This document shows, piece by piece, positions 3,710 to 53,937 of a stretch of 64,000 nucleotides of DNA. The notes below the pieces were generated by a model that had not been told where the DNA came from, made no database searches, and saw nothing but the letters and a program-made list of their open reading frames with translations. Position numbers and translations under genes: made by a program. Each line of letters opens with the position of its first letter. The first letter of the stretch is position 1. The stretch is from IMG/VR virus record IMGVR_UViG_3300042367_000228, positions 248,001 through 312,000 of that record; one strand, given 5' to 3'.

Positions 3710-4867
3710 TTATTGCCCTTGTTGAACTTGAATTGGTGCGCATCCTCCGGCTGTAGCACAATTAAAGTTTATTGAGTAGTACTGTTGAGTAGCACCACTC
3801 TGTTGTAGACTTAAGTCTACTGGTTGTCCTGATAAGGTAATATCAGTTATATGATTTGCTGCACCTTGTTGTAATACATCAACATGTTTATTACCACCAG
3901 ATAATTCAATATTAGCATAATAATTTCCACTACCCTTTTGTTGTAAAATTAAACTGTTGTTATTATCAGTTATATTTATAAAAGCACCTTTACTAAACCC
4001 GGCAGTATATGTATCTTGATCTATACTAAGCAAATTAGAATTGCCATTTACTGTTAAGTCAATAAAGTTTACTTGTAAGTTATTGGCTGCAGTTTGATTA
4101 ATAGTAGTAGTGTTAGACGAGCCATTACTGCTGTAATTTACATAATTGTTGTTAGTACCTTTTTGATCAATTGTAATCTTGTTATTGTTTCCTAACTGAT
4201 CTATATATACTTGATTGTCAGTAGTTGATCTAGATGTAAAAGCCGTTACTTTTGCAGTATTAGCAGGAGCGGCATTAAATGAAGATCCACTGCCACCGCA
4301 GCAATATACACTTGGAAACGTAGTCCATGGTAACGTACTTCCTAAGTCAATGCTAGTAGTAGGATCATTTTGATCGTACAAGAATGTTATTTCTGCAATT
4401 TGCATAGAGTTAGCAGCACCTGCGTCTTTAACAATTGGAAACGTTATATTATAATACACGTATGCTTCTGTATTGTTAATAGGGTATACTGGACTAACTG
4501 CAAGTCTATTATTAGGTAATGCAATAAGTTGAGAAGTTATTAACGTCCAACCTCCTGATGTATCATTACTTCCAAATAAACTAAAACTAGCAGGATCTCG
4601 TTCTGGAGAATCATTTGCTGTAGTAAATTGTACTTGACTAATAACTTTACCTTGTGACAGTTTAAGCATAACACCTGCATTAAGTTTATCAAAGTTAAGA
4701 TACTTAGTTCCGGGATTACCGTCAAACGCATTACTAAAGAACTCACCACCTGGACTATTCATACTTGATGGAATATATCCTAACATTAATGGTCTAAGTG
4801 GTACATAGTTAGGAACAGCATCTACATTTGAATACCATAACAACAATATGAAAAATAAAATTCTCAT
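3710..4867 (-). CDS. Secreted protein: galactose-binding/F5-8-like domain plus curlin-like repeats
   Basis: Signal peptide; AFDGNPGTKY...TANDSPERDP...GSND domain; C-terminal repeats of the I-x-Q-x-G-x-x-N type. Confidence 0.7.
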   Translation of the reverse strand: MRILFFILLLWYSNVDAVPNYVPLRPLMLGYIPSSMNSPGGEFFSNAFDGNPGTKYLNFDKLNAGVMLKLSQGKVISQVQFTTANDSPERDPASFSLFGSNDTSGGWTLITSQLIALPNNRLAVSPVYPINNTEAYVYYNITFPIVKDAGAANSMQIAEITFLYDQNDPTTSIDLGSTLPWTTFPSVYCCGGSGSSFNAAPANTAKVTAFTSRSTTDNQVYIDQLGNNNKITIDQKGTNNNYVNYSSNGSSNTTTINQTAANNLQVNFIDLTVNGNSNLLSIDQDTYTAGFSKGAFINITDNNNSLILQQKGSGNYYANIELSGGNKHVDVLQQGAANHITDITLSGQPVDLSLQQSGATQQYYSINFNCATAGGCAPIQVQQGQ

Positions 4868-40133: not shown

Positions 40134-40811
40134 TTATTTTGGTTTTATCGTAATTGTTATTGTACTTTCTGAACTAGTATCTTTACCTTTGTTTAAGGTA
40201 CCGCCTGAATCTTTTATTTTAAATCCTATAGCTGCATGTTGAGTACCATTTTTAGATCCATCTGGATAATACGCTAACAACGATACATTAGCTGATGGAA
40301 CACTTTGATTAGCTTTAACATTAGCTTTTCCTAATTTAAGTCTTCCGACTTTTGGTAATTTTGATATAATAACTGCGCTAATGCTGTTATTATCAATATC
40401 TTTAAATTTAAAATCAGATTGAGTAAAATGTTTAACAACTCTTTTAGTTATAGTAAACGCATTAGCGATTGCAGTCGGTGGTTCATTAGCAGAAACCGAC
40501 GATGTGCTATCGCCGGCATACACGTTATCACTGCCTGACGAAATTGTTCCAGCATCTGCTTTATCAGTATCTCTTGCAATCGGTATATTATTAACAAACA
40601 CAGTTGCAGATCCAGCTTTAATAGTTTCTGTGTGATTTACACACTTGTCACCTACTTTATGAGTATGAACTTTTATAGCATCTCCTTTTCTACAAACACC
40701 AATGTTATTAACAAATACATTAGTTGAACATTTGTCGGTGTTAGTAGTCGCAGTGCATAAGTGACCTGTTGATACTGTATCTTTACCTTTACCTCTTGCA
40801 ACTCGTGGCAT
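40134..40811 (-). CDS. PAAR spike-tip protein (gp5.4-like) with C-terminal Ig/cadherin-like extension
   Basis: MPRVAR, NVFVNNIGVCRKGD, GSATVFVNNIPIAR, SGSDNVYAG, followed by NEPPTA...DFKFKDIDN. Confidence 0.8.
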   Translation of the reverse strand: MPRVARGKGKDTVSTGHLCTATTNTDKCSTNVFVNNIGVCRKGDAIKVHTHKVGDKCVNHTETIKAGSATVFVNNIPIARDTDKADAGTISSGSDNVYAGDSTSSVSANEPPTAIANAFTITKRVVKHFTQSDFKFKDIDNNSISAVIISKLPKVGRLKLGKANVKANQSVPSANVSLLAYYPDGSKNGTQHAAIGFKIKDSGGTLNKGKDTSSESTITITIKPK

Positions 40812-45151: not shown

Positions 45152-45703
45152 TTAACTAACTGTTTCATTTATGTAGTTCCAGTTTATTATTTTCCATTGA
45201 TTTTCTAAGTACTTTTTCTTGTCTGATTGATAGTCTAACGCCCATGAATGTTCCCACCAATCAACTAACAATACAATGTCTTTTTTAATAGCATGATTAG
45301 TTATTGTTTTGATCTTGCCATCTTTAGCAAGATAGACCCAACCACTGCCTTGTATGCCCATTGCTACTTTTAAAAACTCTTCTTTAAACTTATCAAAAGT
45401 TTTATAATGTGTTTCAATTAAATCTAAAACTTTGCCAACTGGTTTGTTTAAGTTGCCAGTTGACTCTTGATATTGTTGGAATAAGATATTGTGTAAAAAT
45501 ACACCTGCTTCATTAAACACAGGATCACCTTCACCTGCATTATAACGCTTTGCGTATGTTTTAGCAAGACGTTCATAATGATAATCTAATGTTGCTTTTG
45601 ATATAGCAGGACTTAACTCATCCATTCCGTATGGTAGAGGATCTATTTTTAATGATGCAGGTTTACCTTCAGTTATGAATTGCTTAATAAAACTATAGCT
45701 CAT
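45152..45703 (-). CDS. sod: Fe/Mn superoxide dismutase
   Basis: LPY...TLDYHY, LHNILF, QGSGWVYL, DWWEHSW. Confidence 0.88.
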   Translation of the reverse strand: MSYSFIKQFITEGKPASLKIDPLPYGMDELSPAISKATLDYHYERLAKTYAKRYNAGEGDPVFNEAGVFLHNILFQQYQESTGNLNKPVGKVLDLIETHYKTFDKFKEEFLKVAMGIQGSGWVYLAKDGKIKTITNHAIKKDIVLLVDWWEHSWALDYQSDKKKYLENQWKIINWNYINETVS

Positions 45704-46662
45704 AGCTTACAGGCCTCGCAGGATTCTTCATCGTCTTCAATAATTGCACTAGGTAAATCAACTTCGGCTTCTTCTTTACTACCTGTTTTATCAATTAAAC
45801 TATAGTAGAAAGTTTTCAAACCCCAATAGTGACCTAACATTAAGTTTTTAGCAATTAGTGTAGTTGGGACTTTTCTACCTTCAAAGTGTCTAGGTGAATA
45901 AAATGTATTTGTGCTAATACTTTGATCTACGTATGCAGCCAATACAGCAGCAGTTTTCAAATAACCTACACAATCAGTTTGTTCCCACATAAGTTGATAT
46001 TTGTTTTTCAATTTATGATATTCCGGAACTACTTGTGTAAGTGAACCAGCTTTTGATTCTTTAACTTGAATAAGTTGCATTGGCATTTCAATTCCATTAG
46101 TTGAATTAATTACAACTGAACTTGATTCTACTGGAGCTATAGCCATTTGAGTCGCATTTCGTACACCGTATTTTTTCATTTCAACACGCAATGGTTCCCA
46201 ATCAAGTTCTGGTGTAAAATCAGTCAATTCATTAACACCGTCTGCACGTAGTTCCCATGGAAATATACCTTGTCCGTATCGAGTTTTATCACTATCTAAA
46301 CATGGTCCACGCTCCTTAGCCAGTTCAACCGATATTTCAGTAGTATAAAATGCTAAATGTTCCATCCAGCTTTTAACTTCAGCAAGCATATCTGCGTCTC
46401 CGTATTTAAAATTGCGTTTAGCTGCCCAGTATGCTAAATTTGTAACTCCAATTCCTAATGGTCGAATTTCATCATTACTTAGTTTACTGTGGATTGACAG
46501 ATAATCTTGGTAATCTAAAATATTGTTTAAACTGCGGTGAAGAATACGACAAGCTCTGCGCATATCTTCCGGATTTCTAAAACTCCCCCAATTAATACTG
46601 CCTAAGGTGCATAAGGCTATTTTTGGAACTTTACGCACACATTCTTTTTTAATTATTTTCAT
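45700..46662 (-). CDS. nrdA: RNR alpha subunit C-terminal fragment (NrdA-b)
   Basis: IALCTLGSINWG, RPLGIG, AIAPVESSS, DQSISTN, KTFYY, CEACKL; preceded by non-NrdA MKIIKKECVRKVP. Confidence 0.93.
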   Translation of the reverse strand: MKIIKKECVRKVPKIALCTLGSINWGSFRNPEDMRRACRILHRSLNNILDYQDYLSIHSKLSNDEIRPLGIGVTNLAYWAAKRNFKYGDADMLAEVKSWMEHLAFYTTEISVELAKERGPCLDSDKTRYGQGIFPWELRADGVNELTDFTPELDWEPLRVEMKKYGVRNATQMAIAPVESSSVVINSTNGIEMPMQLIQVKESKAGSLTQVVPEYHKLKNKYQLMWEQTDCVGYLKTAAVLAAYVDQSISTNTFYSPRHFEGRKVPTTLIAKNLMLGHYWGLKTFYYSLIDKTGSKEEAEVDLPSAIIEDDEESCEACKL

Positions 46663-47425
46663 GATTTATTGTTCTTCCTATACGCCAATTTGTATTTTCT
46701 AAAAGATACTCATTAATAGACGATGAGTCAATCCTAATATTAGTGTACCCATCTGTTATCCATCTCCATTTTGAAGACTGTATTGATAACAAACTTTTTT
46801 GTGTTGGGCTTCTATAATGCGGGTTGTATTTAACTTGTTCAGTGGCAGTTAATGTAGCGTTAACTAAGTTAATCAAATCTGTATGATTTTTAATTCCTCG
46901 ATTAGATATCAATCTACTGCTAATAGATAGCTCAGATTTTAATACAGAATCAATTTCATTTCGAAGTAAATAACTACCGTATTTGAAATTTTCATGTATA
47001 TAATTAACTATAGTGTTAATAATATCGATAGCTGTAATATCAGGCCGAGCATTTCCGTTATTCATACCTGCACTTAGCTTACTTCTATTTTTACCCCATT
47101 CTATTAATTGTTTTTTAGAATATCGTTCTTTTGTGTTGCCGCCATCACCGCCACGGGTCATATTGTACCCGTAGCTAAACGTATCAAGCAAGTCTATATA
47201 ATATATTTCTTTTGATTTTGCATCAGATTGTGTACTACATTCATCTAATTTTTCAGTTATAATAGTATTTTCACCATATTTTCTAATTGCACGATGAAAA
47301 TATGTATCAGAACCGTTTCTACTATCTTGAATGTGTTCGTCTAATCGAACGTTAATATTTTTTTCAGTGTATCCTATGTATTTTTTGTTATTAATAGTGT
47401 GACAATATATATTATAAGTTTTCAT
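46649..47425 (-). CDS. GIY-YIG homing endonuclease inserted in nrdA
   Basis: NIYCHTINNKKYIGYT...RLDEH...FHRAIRKYG...E.YYI...GYNMTRGGDG; own late promoter CTAAATA at ~47446-47452. Confidence 0.88.
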   Translation of the reverse strand: MKTYNIYCHTINNKKYIGYTEKNINVRLDEHIQDSRNGSDTYFHRAIRKYGENTIITEKLDECSTQSDAKSKEIYYIDLLDTFSYGYNMTRGGDGGNTKERYSKKQLIEWGKNRSKLSAGMNNGNARPDITAIDIINTIVNYIHENFKYGSYLLRNEIDSVLKSELSISSRLISNRGIKNHTDLINLVNATLTATEQVKYNPHYRSPTQKSLLSIQSSKWRWITDGYTNIRIDSSSINEYLLENTNWRIGRTINHENN

Positions 47426-47463
47426 AAATATCTTCCTCTTGCTTGTATTTAGCAGAGATACTA

Positions 47464-48993
47464 CTACCCACTTATTAAAAGATTATCAATATCGTCATCT
47501 TCAGACAACTCTCGAACTTTCTTTTTCTCACCTGATTTTAATAATACCGTGTGTTCTCCTGCTAATGTTACTTCCTCTCCAGTGTCAAGTGTGAGTTTAA
47601 ATCCACCTTCATCGGATAACGAATTAAACGGTGCAGTTGGTAAAAGTATTTCGCAGCATAAATTACTTTGATAAATTGTATGCCATAACGGATCAAATGG
47701 TCCTTGCTTAATTACGTTATCTATAAAGACTAAGTAGATGCGCCCGGTGTCAGTTCGTTCTTTTAGGAGTCCTCCTTTGAATACTTCTTCCGCAGACATG
47801 GTCTTCTTCCGAACTCCTGTATTTTTTTCATACTGTAGGTACAGTTTTTCAAAGAGAGCTGTATCAGTGTAAAACGCTTCGTATAAGTCTGGAACTTCAT
47901 TAGGATCAAAAAATGTTATGTTTTCTTTGTTTTTAAATCTACGCCAAAAGAACGCGCTTAATACAACGCTGTAATCTAAATGACGCACCCGTGTTTCATC
48001 TGTGCCTTGATTGTTTTTAAGTACAATTAAGTCGTCGAACTGATAATGCCAAATCGGATATGTTACAGTAGCACTAGCATTTCTAATACCACCTTGTGAA
48101 CAGCAACGCAAGTCACCAAACCATTTCTTTAAAAATGGAATCATACCTGTGTGCATAATTTCACCACCGCGTATAGGACTTCCTAGTGCGCGTACACGAC
48201 CAATTTCTAAACCTATGCCAGCACGTTTGCTAGCATATTTTGCCATCATCTCGCCACTAGCAAATATAGAATCCAAATCGTCATCACTGCGTATGAGAAC
48301 GCAGCTGCTGAATTGTTTAGTTGGAGTTCCGAGCCCAGCAAGAACGGGTGTAGCAAGAGTAAATAAGCCATCGGATGCAGCATTATAATATTCCTTAATA
48401 TATTTCATTCTAGCTGCATTTGGTTCTTCCTTATGGAACACAGTTGCAGCTGCAATCATATACCTAACTTGTGGAGTTTCGTAAATGTCTTTAGTAGATC
48501 GATTACGGACTAAGTATTTCTCAATAAGCTGTTCAATTGCAGCATATGAGTAAGTTTCATCTTTTGAATGATCAAGCATGTCATTCATTTTGTTCCATTC
48601 TTCAGTTGAATACCACTCTAATAACTCTGGTGTGTATAATCCAACTTCGATGTTCTTTTTAACTATTGTAAATAGATGCGGTGGCTCGTATTGGCCGTAT
48701 ACATCTTTGCGGAGCATAGACAAACGCTGTTTGCCTGCAACGTATTGATAATTTGTATGACCTACATCTGGGTTGGCGTCAACATCAATTAAGTTAACGA
48801 TTGCTCGCAGTGTAATTTCGTCAATTTCAGATGTAGTAATATTATCGTAAAATTGTGGCTGGCTTTTAATTTCGATCATTGATTGACTAACATCGGCAAT
48901 TCCACTGCAAATCTTTGCAATCTGCGCCTGCCATTTGTCAATTGTTAGTTCTACTTTAGTGCCATTTCTTTTTGTAACTGTTATTTTATTCAT
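47464..48993 (-). CDS. nrdA: RNR alpha subunit N-terminal fragment (NrdA-a)
   Basis: ATP cone VTKRNG, QFSSCVL, CSQGGIRN, QSNLCCEILLP, then a ~47-aa non-NrdA tail. Confidence 0.93.
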   Translation of the reverse strand: MNKITVTKRNGTKVELTIDKWQAQIAKICSGIADVSQSMIEIKSQPQFYDNITTSEIDEITLRAIVNLIDVDANPDVGHTNYQYVAGKQRLSMLRKDVYGQYEPPHLFTIVKKNIEVGLYTPELLEWYSTEEWNKMNDMLDHSKDETYSYAAIEQLIEKYLVRNRSTKDIYETPQVRYMIAAATVFHKEEPNAARMKYIKEYYNAASDGLFTLATPVLAGLGTPTKQFSSCVLIRSDDDLDSIFASGEMMAKYASKRAGIGLEIGRVRALGSPIRGGEIMHTGMIPFLKKWFGDLRCCSQGGIRNASATVTYPIWHYQFDDLIVLKNNQGTDETRVRHLDYSVVLSAFFWRRFKNKENITFFDPNEVPDLYEAFYTDTALFEKLYLQYEKNTGVRKKTMSAEEVFKGGLLKERTDTGRIYLVFIDNVIKQGPFDPLWHTIYQSNLCCEILLPTAPFNSLSDEGGFKLTLDTGEEVTLAGEHTVLLKSGEKKKVRELSEDDDIDNLLISG

Positions 48994-49171: not shown

Positions 49172-50755
49172 TTAGGAAGTAGCGATATACGAGTAAGTTA
49201 GTGTACCGTCGTTACCTGAAATTGTATTAGTATACGAAACAACTATTGAATTGTTAACAATAGCTGCTGTAAATTTTAAAAGCATAGCAGTTCCGGAAAT
49301 ACCAGTACAAGTATAATCATCGGAAGAGTTAATAGAAGGAGGAGACGCAATTAATGAAATTTGTCCTTGTCTAATATAATTCCCGTTAAAAATGTAATTT
49401 ATAGTATATGACATAAATCCAGCGACTGTTCCGGTGCTGTCTGTTTTTAATGGTAATCTAAATAAATCTACACTTTCTACAGATTGAGCAATATCTACAG
49501 TTAAAGGTGTACTAGTATATACTGCAGATCCTGATACTTCTGGAACGTATTGTAAAGCTGATAACGGATCTGATAACGCTATTGATCTATCAGATGTGAT
49601 ACTTGAATTATAATTTCCAAGTTGGCTAAAGTAAATTTGCGGAACTGTTGACTCTGTATCGCCACCTTCTCCAACATTAGTTAAGTTACAATTTATAACC
49701 GTGTTCTTAATACTATTATCGCTGTTAATTGCATGCGCTATAATATTATCAAATTTATAATTAGAGATATTAATATTAGATGGGCCGTCAGATACTAAAT
49801 CAACCCCTAAAGAAAACCCAGTATGTGCTGTCGAAATAACACCATTAATAAAATTAATATCTGTAGATGCATTGCCTATAAACACACCGCAGAAATAATT
49901 GTTAATTACAACATTGTCAAATATAATGTCAGACGAAGTTGTAGCTAATAAACTTGAAATACTAATTCCTTTATTATCAGGTCTAGACCCAGAATCCCAA
50001 GTTCCGATAATTTTTATATTTTGAAATTTACTATTACTAGTATTAGCAAGATCTAAACCGATAGTTGCAGTTGTTTCTGTTGACTGAATAGTAATATCTT
50101 GAATATTAATATATCGTGGATTAGTAAGCGGATAAGATGATCCAACATCTGATATACATCTAAATGCAGTTTCTAAACCAGTATATTGGATAATAGTTTT
50201 ATCTATGCCTGCTCCGATAATTGTAGTGTAGCTTGGAATAGTAATTGCATTAATTGTTTTAAAAATGCCAGCTGGCATTTTTAGTATAACTCGTCGTTTA
50301 ACTCCTTCAGATGTATTAGAGAACGATTTAATACCACTGTTTGCAAACAACTGAGTAATTGCACGTTGAATTGCACTTGAATCATCAGTGATGCCGTCGC
50401 CTTTTGCTCCAAAATCATAGACATTTACAGTATCATCTAAAATATTCTGTAATGATCGAACTACTGGAAAACTAATTGACGGTCCGGTAGTTATTAACGT
50501 ATCAGATAATTTGTAAGTATGTTCTAATAATGATATTAATCCAGTTCCGCCTGATCCAGATATAATATCTTTAGATGTTAAAATTTTTGTATTACCTACA
50601 GTAGGTGCGCCTTCTGATACAGAACCATTACCGATGTACAGTTCTTGAGAATCAACTGCCCATCCTAATTCTCCAGATGCTAACTGTGGAAACCCGGGGC
50701 CGGTTCTAGCCTTTCCTCTTCGTATTTGAATTTTTGAAATTTGATAAACTGCCAT
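49172..50755 (-). CDS. Virion protein with pectate-lyase-like beta-helix
   Basis: PQLASGELGWAVD N-terminus; VYDFGAKGDGITDDSSAIQRAI. Confidence 0.75.
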   Translation of the reverse strand: MAVYQISKIQIRRGKARTGPGFPQLASGELGWAVDSQELYIGNGSVSEGAPTVGNTKILTSKDIISGSGGTGLISLLEHTYKLSDTLITTGPSISFPVVRSLQNILDDTVNVYDFGAKGDGITDDSSAIQRAITQLFANSGIKSFSNTSEGVKRRVILKMPAGIFKTINAITIPSYTTIIGAGIDKTIIQYTGLETAFRCISDVGSSYPLTNPRYINIQDITIQSTETTATIGLDLANTSNSKFQNIKIIGTWDSGSRPDNKGISISSLLATTSSDIIFDNVVINNYFCGVFIGNASTDINFINGVISTAHTGFSLGVDLVSDGPSNINISNYKFDNIIAHAINSDNSIKNTVINCNLTNVGEGGDTESTVPQIYFSQLGNYNSSITSDRSIALSDPLSALQYVPEVSGSAVYTSTPLTVDIAQSVESVDLFRLPLKTDSTGTVAGFMSYTINYIFNGNYIRQGQISLIASPPSINSSDDYTCTGISGTAMLLKFTAAIVNNSIVVSYTNTISGNDGTLTYSYIATS

Positions 50756-51412: not shown

Positions 51413-52129
51413 TCAGTTCATACTGTAATACATATCAACTCGATCCCACCATTTATTAACGTATTTGTTAAACTCGCTACCTTCTAATATAAATTCTTGA
51501 TATTGTGGTTCTCCCCATACCCACGGTTTAAGTTCAGGAGGTTTAACACACATTAGAACTACACCTTTTTGTATATTAGTTTCGTGTATCTTATTATGTG
51601 CAATAGAATATGCAGCTAGTTGAAGATAGTAATCTTCAATGTACTCACGTTTTTTAGGTTTATTAGATTGTTTATAATCAAGGATAGCAGGTTCACCTTT
51701 ATGTAATCCTACAGCATCTGTAGTACCTGCATACAGTTCTGGATAGTAAAGTGCAACTTCATTACCCCAAACTTCGTTGACGTTTTTTAATCCGTGATCT
51801 ATAATGTGTTGAGCCATTTTATGACTTTGCTGACTATATGGATTAGAGCCAGATTCATTTAGAAATCCTTGTGCGACAAAATCTTCCAAAAATTTATGCA
51901 TACGAGTTCCGCGACTAGCAGCTTCAGTTGTAATTTGTTGTGCTTTGTCATAGCCAACAGCTTTACGCCATGCTTGTAGTGCAGCTTTATCTTCTTCTGG
52001 TTTTGTTGCTGATAGTATTGTAGTTACGGAAGGAACTTTAGATCCATCAGGGCAAGAATATAAACGCTTGCCCTTAACGGATTGTCTGTTTATTGGTGTG
52101 TATTGATATTTTTCAGTTAGTAGTTTCAT
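51413..52129 (-). CDS. PD-(D/E)XK exonuclease (Cas4/RecB-like)
   Basis: PSVTTILS, RGTRMH, AGTTD...ILDYKQS, LQLAAY; sigma70-type promoter at 52136-52164. Confidence 0.85.
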   Translation of the reverse strand: MKLLTEKYQYTPINRQSVKGKRLYSCPDGSKVPSVTTILSATKPEEDKAALQAWRKAVGYDKAQQITTEAASRGTRMHKFLEDFVAQGFLNESGSNPYSQQSHKMAQHIIDHGLKNVNEVWGNEVALYYPELYAGTTDAVGLHKGEPAILDYKQSNKPKKREYIEDYYLQLAAYSIAHNKIHETNIQKGVVLMCVKPPELKPWVWGEPQYQEFILEGSEFNKYVNKWWDRVDMYYSMN

Positions 52130-52160
52130 AACATAATTATAATACATTTAACTGTCAATG

Positions 52161-52490
52161 TCAATCTTTATTTTTTCTTCTGTTAAATGCTTCTCTAGAT
52201 CTTTTAGAAAAGTCACTTTCAACTTCTTTATGTTGAGTTAATGGATCCGGCATAGCTTGATTTGTTTTAATTACTAACCCTGATTCGTCATACCGATCAA
52301 CAAATTGTTGAACTAACGGGTCTGATTCGTAACGTTGAGCAAAGCTTTCAAAATCAATAAACGGTGCACCACCTGTTCTGTCTACTCTATTAAGAGCGTC
52401 CCATGTTAGTGATGCACTCGATTTATTGTTGTTTGCTGCAGATTGAATTGTCCGTAGTGTATTAATTAACGGATCAATTGATTCATTTAC
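52161..52490 (-). CDS. Start-less 109-codon ORF, predicted -1 frameshift extension of 52487-53467
   Basis: Open from the A9-G run (VNESIDPLINTLRT...FNRRKNKD*); no ATG/GTG/TTG near the 5' end; fills the intergenic gap exactly. Confidence 0.7.
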   Translation of the reverse strand, partial: VNESIDPLINTLRTIQSAANNNKSSASLTWDALNRVDRTGGAPFIDFESFAQRYESDPLVQQFVDRYDESGLVIKTNQAMPDPLTQHKEVESDFSKRSREAFNRRKNKD

Positions 52491-53467
52491 TTTTTTTTTG
52501 AGCTTAACATCATACCTAATTTACGGCTGTATTCAACGCTTTCACGTTTCATACGACCTGCATCAGGAGCTGCGCTTGCTAATTCTTCAGGTGAACCAGG
52601 TTGTTCTTCACCAGGAGCTGCGCCGCCAAAATTAGGAGCTGGAGCACCTGCTACTTGAGCTGCTGCACCGATCGGTGCAGTTTCACCGGCTACTGGCGCA
52701 CCTAACATTTCTGGTTCATCGCCGGTTACAACTGCTAGCCCTTGGTTTAAACCTTGACGTGATGTTTCTAATGCTGTGTAGATATTATCCATTGCAGGTC
52801 TAACAACACTATCGTATCTTTGAGCAACGTCACTACCGGCTACACGTTTAATATTATCTAACAATTCTAAGAATTGCTCAGAACGCATAGCAGCCATATC
52901 TTCTAACCATCCTGTGATACGTTGTACAATGTCACGTGTTTGGATAATTACATCGGCCTTTGTTTCTTCATCTTCTAATAAAATCCAGCTAGCTTGTGAT
53001 TCGTTTAAATCATAACGTACTTTTAATTCTGCAGACAATTCACGACGATCAGATTCGCCTAATGAAATTCTACGAATTGCACTATTGATCCAACTTTCTG
53101 GAACTGATAATTTTGTAGCACGTTGGCGTAATCTACTTTGAGCATACCCTTCGTCTGTTTTTTCTTTTTTCTTTTTACGAGGTGCATCATCTTCAACATC
53201 TACTTCATCACAGTTTTCACGTTCAAAAATTTCTTGATTTAATACATCAAGAAACATACGTGTTTTTTGATATGTAGCATTTTCGACAACTGAGTTATAG
53301 CTTTCATTCATTTCAAATTGGCTAATTTTAGTACGTAATTTATTACGTGCATCTTCAAGCTGTGCATCTGTAAAATTTTCTAATTTTACCGTATAACCAA
53401 AGTTTTTAGCTAAACTTTCGTTTAGTTTTAAACTAGTTAACGGTTGATTTAAATCATTAATTTGCAT
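52487..53467 (-). CDS. Acidic helical head/core-like protein with MQINDL tag
   Basis: TATAAATA upstream; repeated LNES/MNES/KRES motifs; ends TCA AAA AAA AAG TAA. Confidence 0.7.
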   Translation of the reverse strand: MQINDLNQPLTSLKLNESLAKNFGYTVKLENFTDAQLEDARNKLRTKISQFEMNESYNSVVENATYQKTRMFLDVLNQEIFERENCDEVDVEDDAPRKKKKEKTDEGYAQSRLRQRATKLSVPESWINSAIRRISLGESDRRELSAELKVRYDLNESQASWILLEDEETKADVIIQTRDIVQRITGWLEDMAAMRSEQFLELLDNIKRVAGSDVAQRYDSVVRPAMDNIYTALETSRQGLNQGLAVVTGDEPEMLGAPVAGETAPIGAAAQVAGAPAPNFGGAAPGEEQPGSPEELASAAPDAGRMKRESVEYSRKLGMMLSSKKK

Positions 53468-53499: not shown

Positions 53500-53937
53500 T
53501 TATATAAAAGACTGACGAAACAATCGAAAAATTAGCTGCTGATAGTATTGAGTCAATGCTGTACTTTCTTCTAACCGTGTTAACATTATTTGATATCTGT
53601 TTTCGTCAGCTACTAACGCTATGTTATTTTTAAAAACTACAGCATCTGTAGAAACTGACGCATACTTATTATCTAACATTTTGATATTTTGATATTTTTC
53701 GTAGTGCCTGTTATTGTATTCTTTTGCAGCAATTAAGGCACAGCTTTTAAGATAGTAATCGTTTATCAATTCTTTTGAAGTTGTATTATACACACCCCAA
53801 TACTTGTTGTCAAGTTGTTTAACTAAGAATCCTTTATAAACTAATGACCCATCAGGTAATACTGAAATTGGTAACGACGCTTGTAATTCTTGATCAAAGT
53901 ACGAAGCTAATTCTTTAATTGATTTCTTGTTTTTCAT
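53500..53937 (-). CDS. Hypothetical protein
   Basis: ORF in the late cluster. Confidence 0.65.
   Translation of the reverse strand: MKNKKSIKELASYFDQELQASLPISVLPDGSLVYKGFLVKQLDNKYWGVYNTTSKELINDYYLKSCALIAAKEYNNRHYEKYQNIKMLDNKYASVSTDAVVFKNNIALVADENRYQIMLTRLEESTALTQYYQQLIFRLFRQSFI

What the first reader, a model, noticed from the sequence alone, without database searches (positions are those of the whole stretch)
52161..52520. Predicted programmed -1 frameshift (A_AAA_AAG) extending a head-core-like protein by 109 aa
Seen: ORF 52487-53467 ends TCA AAA AAA AAG TAA. The -1 frame is closed just upstream (CCG TAA), has no start codon near its 5' end, and stays open for 109 codons with protein-like sequence, filling the gap to the next promoter. 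A stem AATTG-A-TCCGT...ACGGA-CAATT begins ~10 nt downstream. Established: A_AAA_AAG is the most efficient bacterial -1 slippery heptamer (dnaX, IS3 family), and A9 runs also allow transcriptional slippage. Inference: two isoforms (~326 and ~435 aa) of an internal head protein at a fixed ratio, outside the usual tail-chaperone context.
Basis: partly seen in the sequence, partly recalled or inferred. Interest (0 to 1): 0.78.

Follow-up and report, generated by a model that had tools for sequence, protein, structure and literature searches.

The report
Conserved -1 frameshift in jumbo-phage gene
A gene of an uncultured freshwater jumbo phage ends in a run of nine A's that almost certainly makes some ribosomes (or RNA polymerases) slip back one base. 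This adds a 109-residue DNA-binding-like domain to part of the protein, and the arrangement is conserved across a very large, previously unannotated phage family.

Summary
On the minus strand, a 326-aa ORF (53467-52487) ends TCA AAA AAA AAG TAA. The -1 frame has no start codon and stays open for 109 more codons.

- **Conservation:** In 62 distinct relatives, with protein identity down to 32-41%, the A9-A11 run always abuts the stop. The -1 ORF is always open for 104-124 codons. Its peptide is conserved from the third residue, and dN/dS is 0.05-0.2 in close pairs.
- **Codon-level constraint:** The two Lys codons before the last are AAA in 124 of 124 cases, against 32% AAG elsewhere. The preceding codon always ends in A.
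- **No fused version:** No in-frame fused homolog was found among 1.84 billion protein representatives.
- **Relatives with two genes:** Sister lineages and cultured Rak2-like phages encode the two parts as separate genes with their own ATG. These include an ATGA overlap in the same -1 frame.

This is a real programmed -1 recoding site, not an error or gene decay. Ribosomal slippage is favoured because of the A_AAA_AAG heptamer, the adjacent stop and a 3' hairpin. RNA polymerase slippage on A9 is not excluded.

The "head-core" label is unsupported. The upstream protein is an all-helical member of a "virion structural" PHROG, and the extension looks like a winged helix with a basic tail. I class it as a new member of a known kind.

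The parts
52487..53467 (-). Gene A: 326-aa zero-frame ORF, stop included. It is all-helical, with a long helical hairpin at residues 167-248, disordered linkers at 87-100 and 253-306, and a conserved C-terminal helix ending ...LSSKKK.
   Evidence: There are 2296 homologs, and the best 120 are all 316-344 aa. PHROG 14154 is matched by 82 of 83 members.
52490..52499 (-). Slip site: A9 run (52499->52491) plus G (52490). It contains the heptamer A_AAA_AAG (52496->52490) and an overlapping A_AAA_AAA.
   Evidence: The run is A9 in 51, A10 in 9 and A11 in 1 of 61 unique relatives. Codons -3 and -2 are AAA in 124 of 124 cases, codon -4 always ends in A, and the last codon is AAG in 50, AAA in 10 and AAC in 2.
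52487..52489 (-). Zero-frame stop codon TAA, directly abutting the slip site.
   Evidence: A stop follows the run immediately in 61 of 61 unique loci (TAA 60, TAG 1) and in L087.
52161..52490 (-). Extension B: -1 frame, 109 codons (52490->52164) plus TGA (52163-52161). It has no start codon of its own. The predicted structure is a winged-helix-like core (residues 1-78) with a disordered basic tail.
52446..52479 (-). 3' stem-loop: 10 bp with one bulge and a 13-nt loop, starting 10 nt after AAG, which is 7 nt after the stop. It is weak here and much stronger in most relatives.
52136..52164 (-). Consensus sigma-70-type promoter (12/12) for the downstream exonuclease gene (51413-52147). It overlaps the stop of B and marks the end of the A/B unit.

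Best explanation
This is a programmed -1 recoding site that yields two proteins from one message. Protein A (326 aa) comes from normal termination. Protein A-B (435 aa, junction ...SSKKK-VNESIDPL...) comes from a -1 shift on the A run. The most likely route is ribosomal. Lys-tRNA(s) on A_AAA_AAG, or peptidyl-tRNA-Lys on AAG while the adjacent UAA sits in the A site, re-pair one base back. The slow stop codon and a stem-loop about 7-8 nt past the stop would help the shift. RNA polymerase slippage on the A9 run may contribute. I put about 0.9 on recoding of either type, and the confidence given here (0.55) is for the ribosomal route being the main one. Shown by the data: conservation of the signal, the coding status of the -1 ORF, and the absence of a start codon. 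Inferred: that the shift happens, its route and its efficiency.
For: In 61 unique relatives plus the deep-branching L087 (A protein only 32-41% identical), an A9-A11 run abuts the stop. The -1 frame is open for 104-124 codons, while the +1 frame closes after 1-5 codons. The constraint is at nucleotide level: AAA in 124 of 124 at codons -3 and -2 against 32% AAG elsewhere, and codon -4 always ends in A (TCA in 59 of 59 Ser against 34% elsewhere). Codons -5 to -12 vary freely. The last codon is AAG in 50 of 62. That fits A_AAA_AAG, reported as the most shift-prone heptamer in E. coli (PMC5009743), better than simple run length does. The B peptides align end to end and are conserved from residue 3, upstream of every sporadic start codon. 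In 14 of 61 loci there is no start in the first 40 codons. dN/dS of B is 0.05-0.2 for close pairs. No homolog with B fused in frame behind A exists among 1.84 billion representatives. Predicted folding is most stable (mean MFE about -12.7 kcal/mol) at +5 to +10 after the stop, next to an unstructured stretch. In 39 of 61 loci this window ranks in the top 5% of the locus. Some pairs covary, for example Pro CCC/CCG/CCA with AGG/ACG or CGG/ATG. An independent assembly from another study has A9 with no gap.
Against: There is no direct evidence of the trans-frame product or of its amount. The invariant length of at least 9 A exceeds what one heptamer needs and matches the length at which bacterial RNA polymerase slips efficiently. 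Hairpin spacing is loose: median 11 nt after AAG, range 0-27. In the window itself the hairpin is weak. The fixed 14-bp model gives 64.5% paired cells, and one slid control comes close on the covariation score. Comparable hairpins sit at the 5' end of B in relatives that have their own ATG, so the structure is not specific to frameshifting. No SD-like stimulator lies upstream in 57 of 62 loci. The host and its tRNA-Lys set are unknown.
Confidence: 0.55

Rival explanations
1. Transcriptional slippage is the main route. RNA polymerase adds one A in the A9-A11 run, and standard translation of that mRNA subpopulation gives A-B. This is how Thermus thermophilus dnaX works.
For: The run is never shorter than 9 in 62 unique sequences. 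A9, A10 and A11 are all tolerated, and the base before the heptamer region (third position of codon -4) is invariably A. Runs of 9 A/T slip efficiently in bacteria (PMC5009743). Long homopolymers are otherwise depleted in the window: 1 observed run of 9 or more against 3.6 expected, and 5 of 8 or more against 10. Transcripts that lose one A would enter the +1 frame, which closes after 1-5 codons and is therefore harmless.
Against: The preference for G after A9 (50 of 62) and the invariably adjacent stop bring no benefit to polymerase slippage. A stem-loop downstream, rather than upstream, of the run is not a known stimulator of polymerase slippage (the stimulator point is from my own knowledge). 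Two overlapping heptamers could equally explain the ninth A. RNA contigs were uninformative.
Confidence: 0.3
2. B is a separate protein made by its own initiation or by termination-reinitiation at the A stop, as in the sister clade. The A run would then be nothing more than three lysine codons.
For: The sister lineages do this: an ATGA overlap in L083 and L085, TAA-N-ATG in L081, and SD+ATG in fENko-Kae01. Two unique sequences (L005, shared with L006 and L007, and L015) have an ATG in the B frame one codon after the run, as TAATG.
Against: Most loci have no start codon near the 5' end of B, and 14 of 61 have none in 40 codons. Where starts occur, their positions differ and they lie downstream of the conserved E-x-x-DPL motif. 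This model does not explain AAA in 124 of 124 or the invariant A at codon -4.
Confidence: 0.05
3. The site is an artefact, gene decay or DNA-level phase variation: a homopolymer miscall of a single fused gene, a decaying pseudogene, or replication slippage switching between A and A-B genotypes.
For: Homopolymers are error-prone in sequencing and in replication. Only assembled contigs could be examined, not raw reads.
Against: Eighty loci from many samples, making 61 unique sequences, all share the same frame relation. An independent study's contig has A9 with no gap. B is under purifying selection. No in-frame fused protein appears among 2296 homologs or 1.84 billion representatives.
Confidence: 0.02

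Closest known systems
IS3-family transposase orfA/orfAB frameshift (IS911, IS150, IS3)
   Same: The slippery heptamer is A_AAA_AAG near the end of the upstream ORF. The -1 ORF has no start of its own. The fusion protein is made alongside the short product, and a 3' stem-loop or pseudoknot is often present (PMC4066793; PMC5009743).
   Different: The gene family is unrelated: a jumbo-phage virion-associated helical protein rather than a transposase. The zero-frame stop abuts the heptamer directly. The run is always at least 9 A. No SD-like upstream stimulator is present.
E. coli dnaX (tau/gamma) -1 frameshift
   Same: It uses A_AAA_AAG with a downstream stem-loop, and two products in a set ratio come from one gene.
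   Different: In dnaX the shifted product is the shorter one, and an upstream SD-like element helps the shift. Here the shifted product is 109 aa longer, and no SD-like element is found.
Thermus thermophilus dnaX transcriptional slippage
   Same: A homopolymer of 9 sits at the recoding point, giving a heterogeneous mRNA population.
   Different: No downstream hairpin or adjacent stop is part of that signal. Whether the polymerase slips here is untested.
Phage tail assembly chaperone G/GT frameshift (lambda and most tailed phages)
   Same: It is a conserved phage -1 frameshift near the end of a short ORF that yields a C-terminally extended minor product (PMC10885494).
   Different: The gene here is not next to a tape-measure gene, since a PD-(D/E)XK exonuclease, a tailspike and RNR follow it. 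A is 326 aa and has no match to chaperone families.
Capsid-protein frameshift extensions (T7 10A/10B, T3, Lactobacillus phage A2, Listeria A118/PSA)
   Same: A structural phage protein is made in two lengths by frameshifting near its 3' end.
   Different: A is all-helical and not an HK97-fold capsid protein. The extension looks like a winged helix, not an Ig-like domain.
Two-gene homologs: L083/L085 (ATGA overlap), L081/P0184 (long B), Rak2-like phages fENko-Kae01 ENKO_328/329 and PHA46
   Same: The neighbourhood is the same: A, B, exonuclease, in the metagenomic relatives a pectate-lyase tailspike, then RNR. A is homologous (hhalign 99.9% to L081, 89.6% to ENKO_328). B is homologous in the metagenomic relatives (99% to P0184). 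In L083 and L085, B is also 111 aa and in the -1 frame.
   Different: These relatives have their own ATG for B and no A run. In L081 and P0184, B is 463-771 aa. Homology of ENKO_329 to B is not demonstrable (hhalign 2.6%).

Membership tests
Programmed -1 ribosomal frameshift site | A slippery X_XXY_YYZ heptamer in the zero frame at the point of overlap | tested here: met
   A_AAA_AAG lies at 52496->52490. The heptamer is A_AAA_AAG, A_AAA_AAA or A_AAA_AAC in all 62 unique relatives.
Programmed -1 ribosomal frameshift site | The -1 ORF is coding, lacks its own start, and is conserved with the heptamer at synonymous sites | tested here: met
   There is no conserved start, dN/dS is 0.05-0.2 in close pairs, and codons -3 and -2 are AAA in 124 of 124.
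Programmed -1 ribosomal frameshift site | A 3' stimulatory RNA structure at a defined short spacing (about 5-9 nt) | tested here: inconclusive
   Predicted folding is most stable at +5 to +10, and 61 of 62 loci have a helix of at least 5 bp. The spacing ranges from 0 to 27 nt with a median of 11 after AAG. The structure is weak in the window. Hairpins also occur in relatives that do not frameshift.
Programmed -1 ribosomal frameshift site | The trans-frame protein is detected | not testable with these tools
   No proteomic data are available, and no cultured phage carries the site.
Transcriptional slippage site | A homopolymeric run of about 9 or more A/T | tested here: met
   The run is A9-A11 in 62 of 62 unique sequences.
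Transcriptional slippage site | mRNA is heterogeneous in run length relative to DNA | tested here: inconclusive
   Only Logan contigs were available. RNA contigs barely span the run, and contigs drop rare variants.
Tail assembly chaperone G/GT | The gene lies immediately upstream of the tape-measure gene and is homologous to chaperone families | tested here: not met
   The downstream gene is a PD-(D/E)XK exonuclease (PHROG 298, 1.6e-51), followed by a pectate-lyase tailspike and RNR. No chaperone family matches.
Capsid protein with frameshifted Ig-like extension | The upstream product is the major capsid protein and the extension is Ig-like | tested here: not met
   The AF2 model of A is all-helical. 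B has an H-E-H-H-E-E topology, and its nearest folds are winged helices.
PHROG 14154 ('virion structural protein') | A significant profile match | tested here: met
   82 of 83 A members match at E <= 0.01, with a best value of 1.9e-10. The distant A homologs reach 3.6e-17. Only profile positions of about 9-199 of 771 are covered.
PHROG 14154 ('virion structural protein') | Presence in the virion | not testable with these tools
   The only evidence is indirect. ENKO_328 and ENKO_329 of fENko-Kae01 were detected by LC-MS/MS in an ultrafiltered lysate that also held polymerases and RNR.
Winged-helix domain (for extension B) | An alpha1-beta1-alpha2-alpha3-beta2-beta3 topology and structural similarity to known WH domains | tested here: inconclusive
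   The topology is present and pLDDT is 80-92 in the core. The top Foldseek PDB hits are nearly all WH domains (ORC, MCM8, MarR, histone H1), but E is 0.2 or higher and TM is 0.3-0.63. Atlas hits include AbiEi, MksE, FUR and linker histone at TM 0.41-0.51.

The most novel reading that the evidence does not exclude
The slip site arose once, from an ATGA stop/start coupling junction between two adjacent genes. It converted a separately made partner into a frameshift-dosed C-terminal domain. That domain (winged helix plus lysine/arginine-rich tail, reminiscent of a linker histone) would be a DNA-binding module attached to a set fraction of a helical internal virion protein. In this reading, a stop-adjacent poly-A frameshift sets the stoichiometry of a DNA-organising component in jumbo-phage particles.
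Probability: 0.12. Interest if true: 0.75.

Novelty: new member of a known kind. Interest (0 to 1): 0.55.

Why it matters
The mechanism is textbook. The case is new and unusually clean.

- **Scale of the family:** At least 2296 proteins exist in public data, from freshwater and other metagenomes, on contigs up to about 370 kb. All sampled members carry the signal.
- **Annotation gap:** Current gene callers cannot annotate the site. The 109-aa domain is either missed or called from arbitrary internal starts.
- **A natural evolutionary series:** Separate genes, an ATGA overlap in the same -1 frame, and frameshift fusion are all represented. This series can be used to ask why phages swap translational coupling for frameshifting.
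- **An experimental model:** The stop-adjacent A9G signal is a good substrate for separating ribosomal from polymerase slippage.
- **A practical rule for annotation:** In this clade, an ORF ending (N)NA AAA AAA AAR-stop and followed by a start-less -1 ORF should be joined.

Tried and rejected
- **Phage database searches.** Near-identity DNA search against 50,697 phage records gave no match. tblastn of A gave only a weak hit to Sinorhizobium phage Phosso, and B gave none. The Phosso neighbourhood is all hypothetical proteins.
- **Family and structure databases.** Pfam, PDB profile searches and the ESM Atlas gave no functional name for A or B. Foldseek of A against PDB returned only generic helical bundles. 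Against viral models it returned only uncharacterised jumbo-phage proteins from Atu_ph07, RaK2 and PaBG.
- **Read mapping.** This was intended to test the homopolymer length and RNA slippage. Only assembled contigs were served. They confirm A9 in DNA but cannot show minor RNA species.
- **Locus retrieval with a mixed B-domain alignment.** This failed because no stretch was conserved enough. Single-protein queries recovered only a few loci of the two-gene clade.
- **Upstream SD-like stimulator.** None was found at a useful spacing.
- **Tail-chaperone and capsid-extension readings.** Both were rejected on gene context and fold.
- **Homology of fENko-Kae01 ENKO_329 to B.** It is not demonstrable by profile comparison. 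Only synteny, size and a similar C-terminal motif suggest it.
- **Literature searches.** I found no description of this site, nor any paper on DUF3008.
Full report
**What is in the sequence.** The feature lies on the minus strand. An ATG-initiated ORF of 326 codons (53467->52487, gene A) ends TCA AAA AAA AAG TAA. The nine A's occupy 52499->52491 and are the only homopolymer of 9 or more in the 64-kb window, against 3.6 expected from a first-order Markov model. The -1 frame is closed by TAA at 52523-52521. It then stays open to TGA at 52163-52161, which is 109 codons past the shift and begins VNESIDPLINTLR. That frame holds no ATG, GTG or TTG from its opening through the first 40 codons after the run. 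No start-initiated ORF of 40 aa or more is listed there. In this copy it is weak, at -8.0 kcal/mol (z = -2.4) in a 70-nt fold and z = -1.4 in a 91-nt fold whose MFE is -9.7 kcal/mol. A perfect TTGACA-17-TATAAT promoter at 52164->52136 overlaps the stop of the -1 ORF and precedes the next gene, a PD-(D/E)XK exonuclease.

**Is it an error or gene decay?** No.
- A Logan contig from a different study spans 51948-52561 with six substitutions and no gap, so an independent assembly has A9.
- A has 2296 homologs in the 5.8-billion-protein collection. The best 120 are all 316-344 aa, and the sampled ones end ...SKKK (83-sequence alignment).
- Eighty IMG/VR loci were fetched, with 49-100% protein identity. 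One is identical over this locus and lies on a 372-kb contig, so the window probably comes from a freshwater jumbo phage of about 370 kb.
- In all 80 loci an A9-A11 run is followed by at most one base and then a stop. The -1 frame is open for 104-124 codons, and the +1 frame closes after 1-5 codons.
- After removing duplicates there are 61 unique sequences: A9 in 51, A10 in 9 and A11 in 1, with TAA in 60 and TAG in 1.

**Is the -1 ORF translated, and from where?**
- The 61 extension peptides align end to end. Conservation begins at the third residue, with the pattern E-x-x-DPL...L..Q...TW...P.I.DY..F..RW...LVDRFDG.G.V.KT...MAKRATK.
- For closely related pairs, dN/dS in this frame is 0.05-0.2. 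Window against L004 gives dN 0.02 and dS 0.295.
- Start codons in this frame are sporadic. They sit at varying positions, mostly downstream of the conserved DPL motif. They are absent from the first 40 codons in 14 of 61 loci, and none lies upstream of the run.
- An exhaustive HMMER search of 1.84 billion cluster representatives with the 109-aa piece found 85 proteins. Nearly all are 30-134-aa calls starting at different internal positions. None carries the domain in frame behind an A-like protein.

The extension is therefore a coding sequence under purifying selection. It can only be reached from gene A by a change of frame, and nature does not seem to tolerate a permanent fusion.

**Nucleotide-level constraint on the signal.** Across 62 unique genes, including the deep-branching L087:
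- Lys codons are 32% AAG elsewhere in A, but codons -3 and -2 are AAA in 124 of 124 cases.
- Ser is TCA in 34% of cases elsewhere, but TCA in 59 of 59 at codon -4. The three non-Ser codons at that position (CCA, CCA, CAA) also end in A.
- The last codon is AAG in 50, AAA in 10 and AAC in 2.
- Codons -5 to -12 vary freely at synonymous sites.

L087's A protein is only 32-41% identical to the window's, yet it carries the identical TCAAAAAAAAAGTAA and a start-less -1 ORF. Selection is therefore acting on the RNA or DNA sequence itself, not only on three lysines.

**The downstream structure.**
- Folding 45-nt windows along all 61 loci shows that predicted folding is most stable (mean MFE -12.7 kcal/mol) at +5 to +10 after the stop. 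This follows an unstructured stretch of about -2 kcal/mol at -45 to -10.
- In 39 of 61 loci this window ranks in the top 5% of stability for its locus. The median z-score against shuffles for the 70 nt after the stop is -3.2.
- The 5' arm always starts at the Asp-Pro codons. Some changes are compensatory. The Pro codon CCC, CCG or CCA pairs with AGG (Arg), ACG (Thr) or CGG (Arg), and ATG (Met) respectively, so the encoded residue changes to keep the pair.
- A single 14-bp model is paired in 64.5% of cells, against 33-48% in slid controls. Cells with changes on both sides number 42, against 22.8 in shuffles (0 of 500 shuffles reach this). One slid control comes close on the covariation score.

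Three caveats apply to the hairpin:
- The spacer is loose. The median is 11 nt after AAG, which is 8 nt after the stop, and the range is 0-27.
- The window's own hairpin is weak.
- Comparable hairpins lie at the 5' end of B in relatives that have their own ATG. The structure may predate the frameshift and may serve translational coupling as well.

No SD-like element lies 10-35 nt upstream in 57 of 62 loci.

**Evolutionary context.** The B domain also occurs at the N-terminus of free-standing proteins with proper starts: P0172 (463 aa), P0184 (771 aa), P0181 and P0174. Their contigs are syntenic with the window. The order is an A homolog (453-460 aa, with a DUF3008 insert, hhalign 99.9% to the A profile, ending ...ILSGR with no A run), then B, a PD-(D/E)XK exonuclease, a pectate-lyase tailspike and RNR.

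In L083 and L085, B is 111 aa, the same size as here. It starts with an ATG that overlaps the A stop as ATGA, so it lies in the same -1 frame.

Cultured Rak2-like jumbo phages (Klebsiella phage fENko-Kae01, Salmonella phage PHA46) have the same neighbourhood with two separate genes. The first is an A-like protein of 206-210 aa (hhalign 89.6%, E 1.9e-6). The second is a 109-aa protein with its own SD and ATG, whose homology to B cannot be shown (2.6%).

In a maximum-likelihood tree of A, midpoint-rooted so that the Rak2-like pair falls on one side of the root, all frameshift-bearing sequences form one clade with support 97/91. This clade is sister to the start-codon clade. The simplest reading is a single origin of the slip site, plausibly from an ATGA-type junction, followed by long maintenance. 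The non-frameshift sample is small (three metagenomic lineages), so the direction of change is an inference.

**What the proteins are.** The AlphaFold2 model of A (83-sequence alignment, mean pLDDT 72) is entirely helical. It has an N-terminal helical region, a long antiparallel helical hairpin at 167-248 (pLDDT around 90), disordered linkers at 87-100 and 253-306, and a C-terminal helix at 303-323 that runs into the lysines. It has no significant PDB neighbour. Its viral neighbours are uncharacterised proteins of uncultured phages and of the jumbo phages Atu_ph07, RaK2 and PaBG.

PHROG 14154 ('virion structural protein') is matched by 82 of 83 A members, but only over its first 190 or so of 771 positions.

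The only experimental hint of particle association is that ENKO_328 and ENKO_329 were detected by LC-MS/MS in fENko-Kae01. That sample was an ultrafiltered lysate in which 220 proteins were found, including polymerases and RNR (PMC11218385). 'Head-core' or 'internal head protein' is therefore unproven.

B (49-sequence alignment, mean pLDDT 73, core 80-92) folds as helix-strand-helix-helix-strand-strand with a disordered basic tail. Its nearest PDB folds are almost all winged-helix domains (ORC, MCM8, MarR, Rok, histone H1), but at non-significant E values of 0.2 or higher. Atlas neighbours include AbiEi, MksE, FUR and linker histone at TM 0.41-0.51. A nucleic-acid-binding role is a lead, not a finding.

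**Mechanism.** I put about 0.9 on programmed -1 recoding that yields A (326 aa) and A-B (435 aa).

For the route I favour the ribosome (about 0.55), for these reasons:
- A_AAA_AAG is the preferred ending.
- The stop codon abuts the site in every sequence. However, the A protein of the non-frameshifting L081 ends at about the same position, so conserved protein length explains part of this.
- A structure sits about 7-8 nt beyond the stop. By my own reckoning, that would place it at the mRNA entrance when UAA occupies the A site and peptidyl-tRNA-Lys on AAG can slip back onto AAA. This step is inferred.

RNA polymerase slippage (about 0.3 as the main route) is a serious rival. The run is never shorter than nine, which is the length at which bacterial polymerase slips efficiently and which Thermus dnaX exploits (PMC5009743). 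Two overlapping heptamers, A_AAA_AAA and A_AAA_AAG, could also explain the ninth A. Both processes may act together.

Independent initiation of B (about 0.05) and artefact, decay or DNA-level phase variation (about 0.02) are disfavoured, for the reasons given above.

**Comparison with known systems and verdict.** The signal works like the IS3-family orfA/orfAB and E. coli dnaX sites, and possibly like Thermus dnaX. It is not a tail-chaperone G/GT pair, because of its context, size and lack of family match. It is not a capsid extension of the T7/T3/A2 type, because of its fold. I found no description of it in the searchable literature.

It is a new, deeply conserved member of a known kind of recoding, in a very large family of uncultured jumbo phages. 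It comes with an informative set of two-gene relatives. The mechanism is ordinary and the product's function is unknown. The evidence is clean, the annotation consequence is practical, and the site would be useful for separating ribosomal from transcriptional slippage.

Noticed in passing
window 45700-48993 (minus strand): The ribonucleotide reductase large subunit is in two pieces. One is 47464-48993 (509 aa: ATP-cone, all-alpha domain, first half of the barrel). The other is 45700-46662 (320 aa: second half of the barrel). A GIY-YIG homing-endonuclease-like ORF (46649-47425) separates them. Relatives have an unsplit RNR of 764-767 aa. This looks like a genes-in-pieces or intron-type insertion.
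   Followed up: partly
window 53500-53937 (minus strand): The 145-aa ORF just upstream of gene A contains a perfect 12/12 sigma-70-type promoter (53813->53785) and a terminator-like hairpin with a T-run (53651->53637). It has no family match. It may not be a real gene, or its true start may lie further downstream.
   Followed up: no
L005-L007 and L015, junction about 3985-3995 and 4014-4020: These loci have an A10 run (L005-L007) or an A9G run (L015) followed by TAATG. That places an ATG in the B frame one codon after the slip site. They carry both the slip signal and a coupled start, and may be intermediates between the two expression modes.
   Followed up: partly
L081 4617-5999; L083 1883-3004: The A homologs of the start-codon clade carry an inserted DUF3008 (PF11450) segment of about 55 aa that is absent from the frameshifting clade. 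No paper mentioning DUF3008 was found.
   Followed up: no
P0184 (771 aa), P0172 (463 aa): In some relatives the B domain heads a much longer protein with Gly/Ala-rich hydrophobic segments and a long helical remainder, somewhat like a tape measure or internal virion protein. P0184 ends with a KESMEYMR motif that echoes the RESVEYSR motif near the C-terminus of A.
   Followed up: partly
window 45152-45703, 40134-40811, 49172-50755: Other genes in the window include an Fe/Mn superoxide dismutase, a PAAR-motif protein, and a tailspike with an Mtd_N domain plus a pectate-lyase fold.
   Followed up: no
window, whole: Long A/T homopolymers are depleted relative to a first-order Markov expectation. 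Runs of 8 or more number 5 against 10 expected, and runs of 9 or more number 1 against 3.6. The single run of 9 is the slip site. This fits selection against accidental slippage.
   Followed up: partly
L087/L088 3329-3398: The most divergent frameshift-bearing lineage has two consecutive hairpins after the stop: 7 bp at +14 and 12 bp at +36 (z = -4.7). Their sequences are unrelated to the DPL-encoding hairpin of the main clade.
   Followed up: partly
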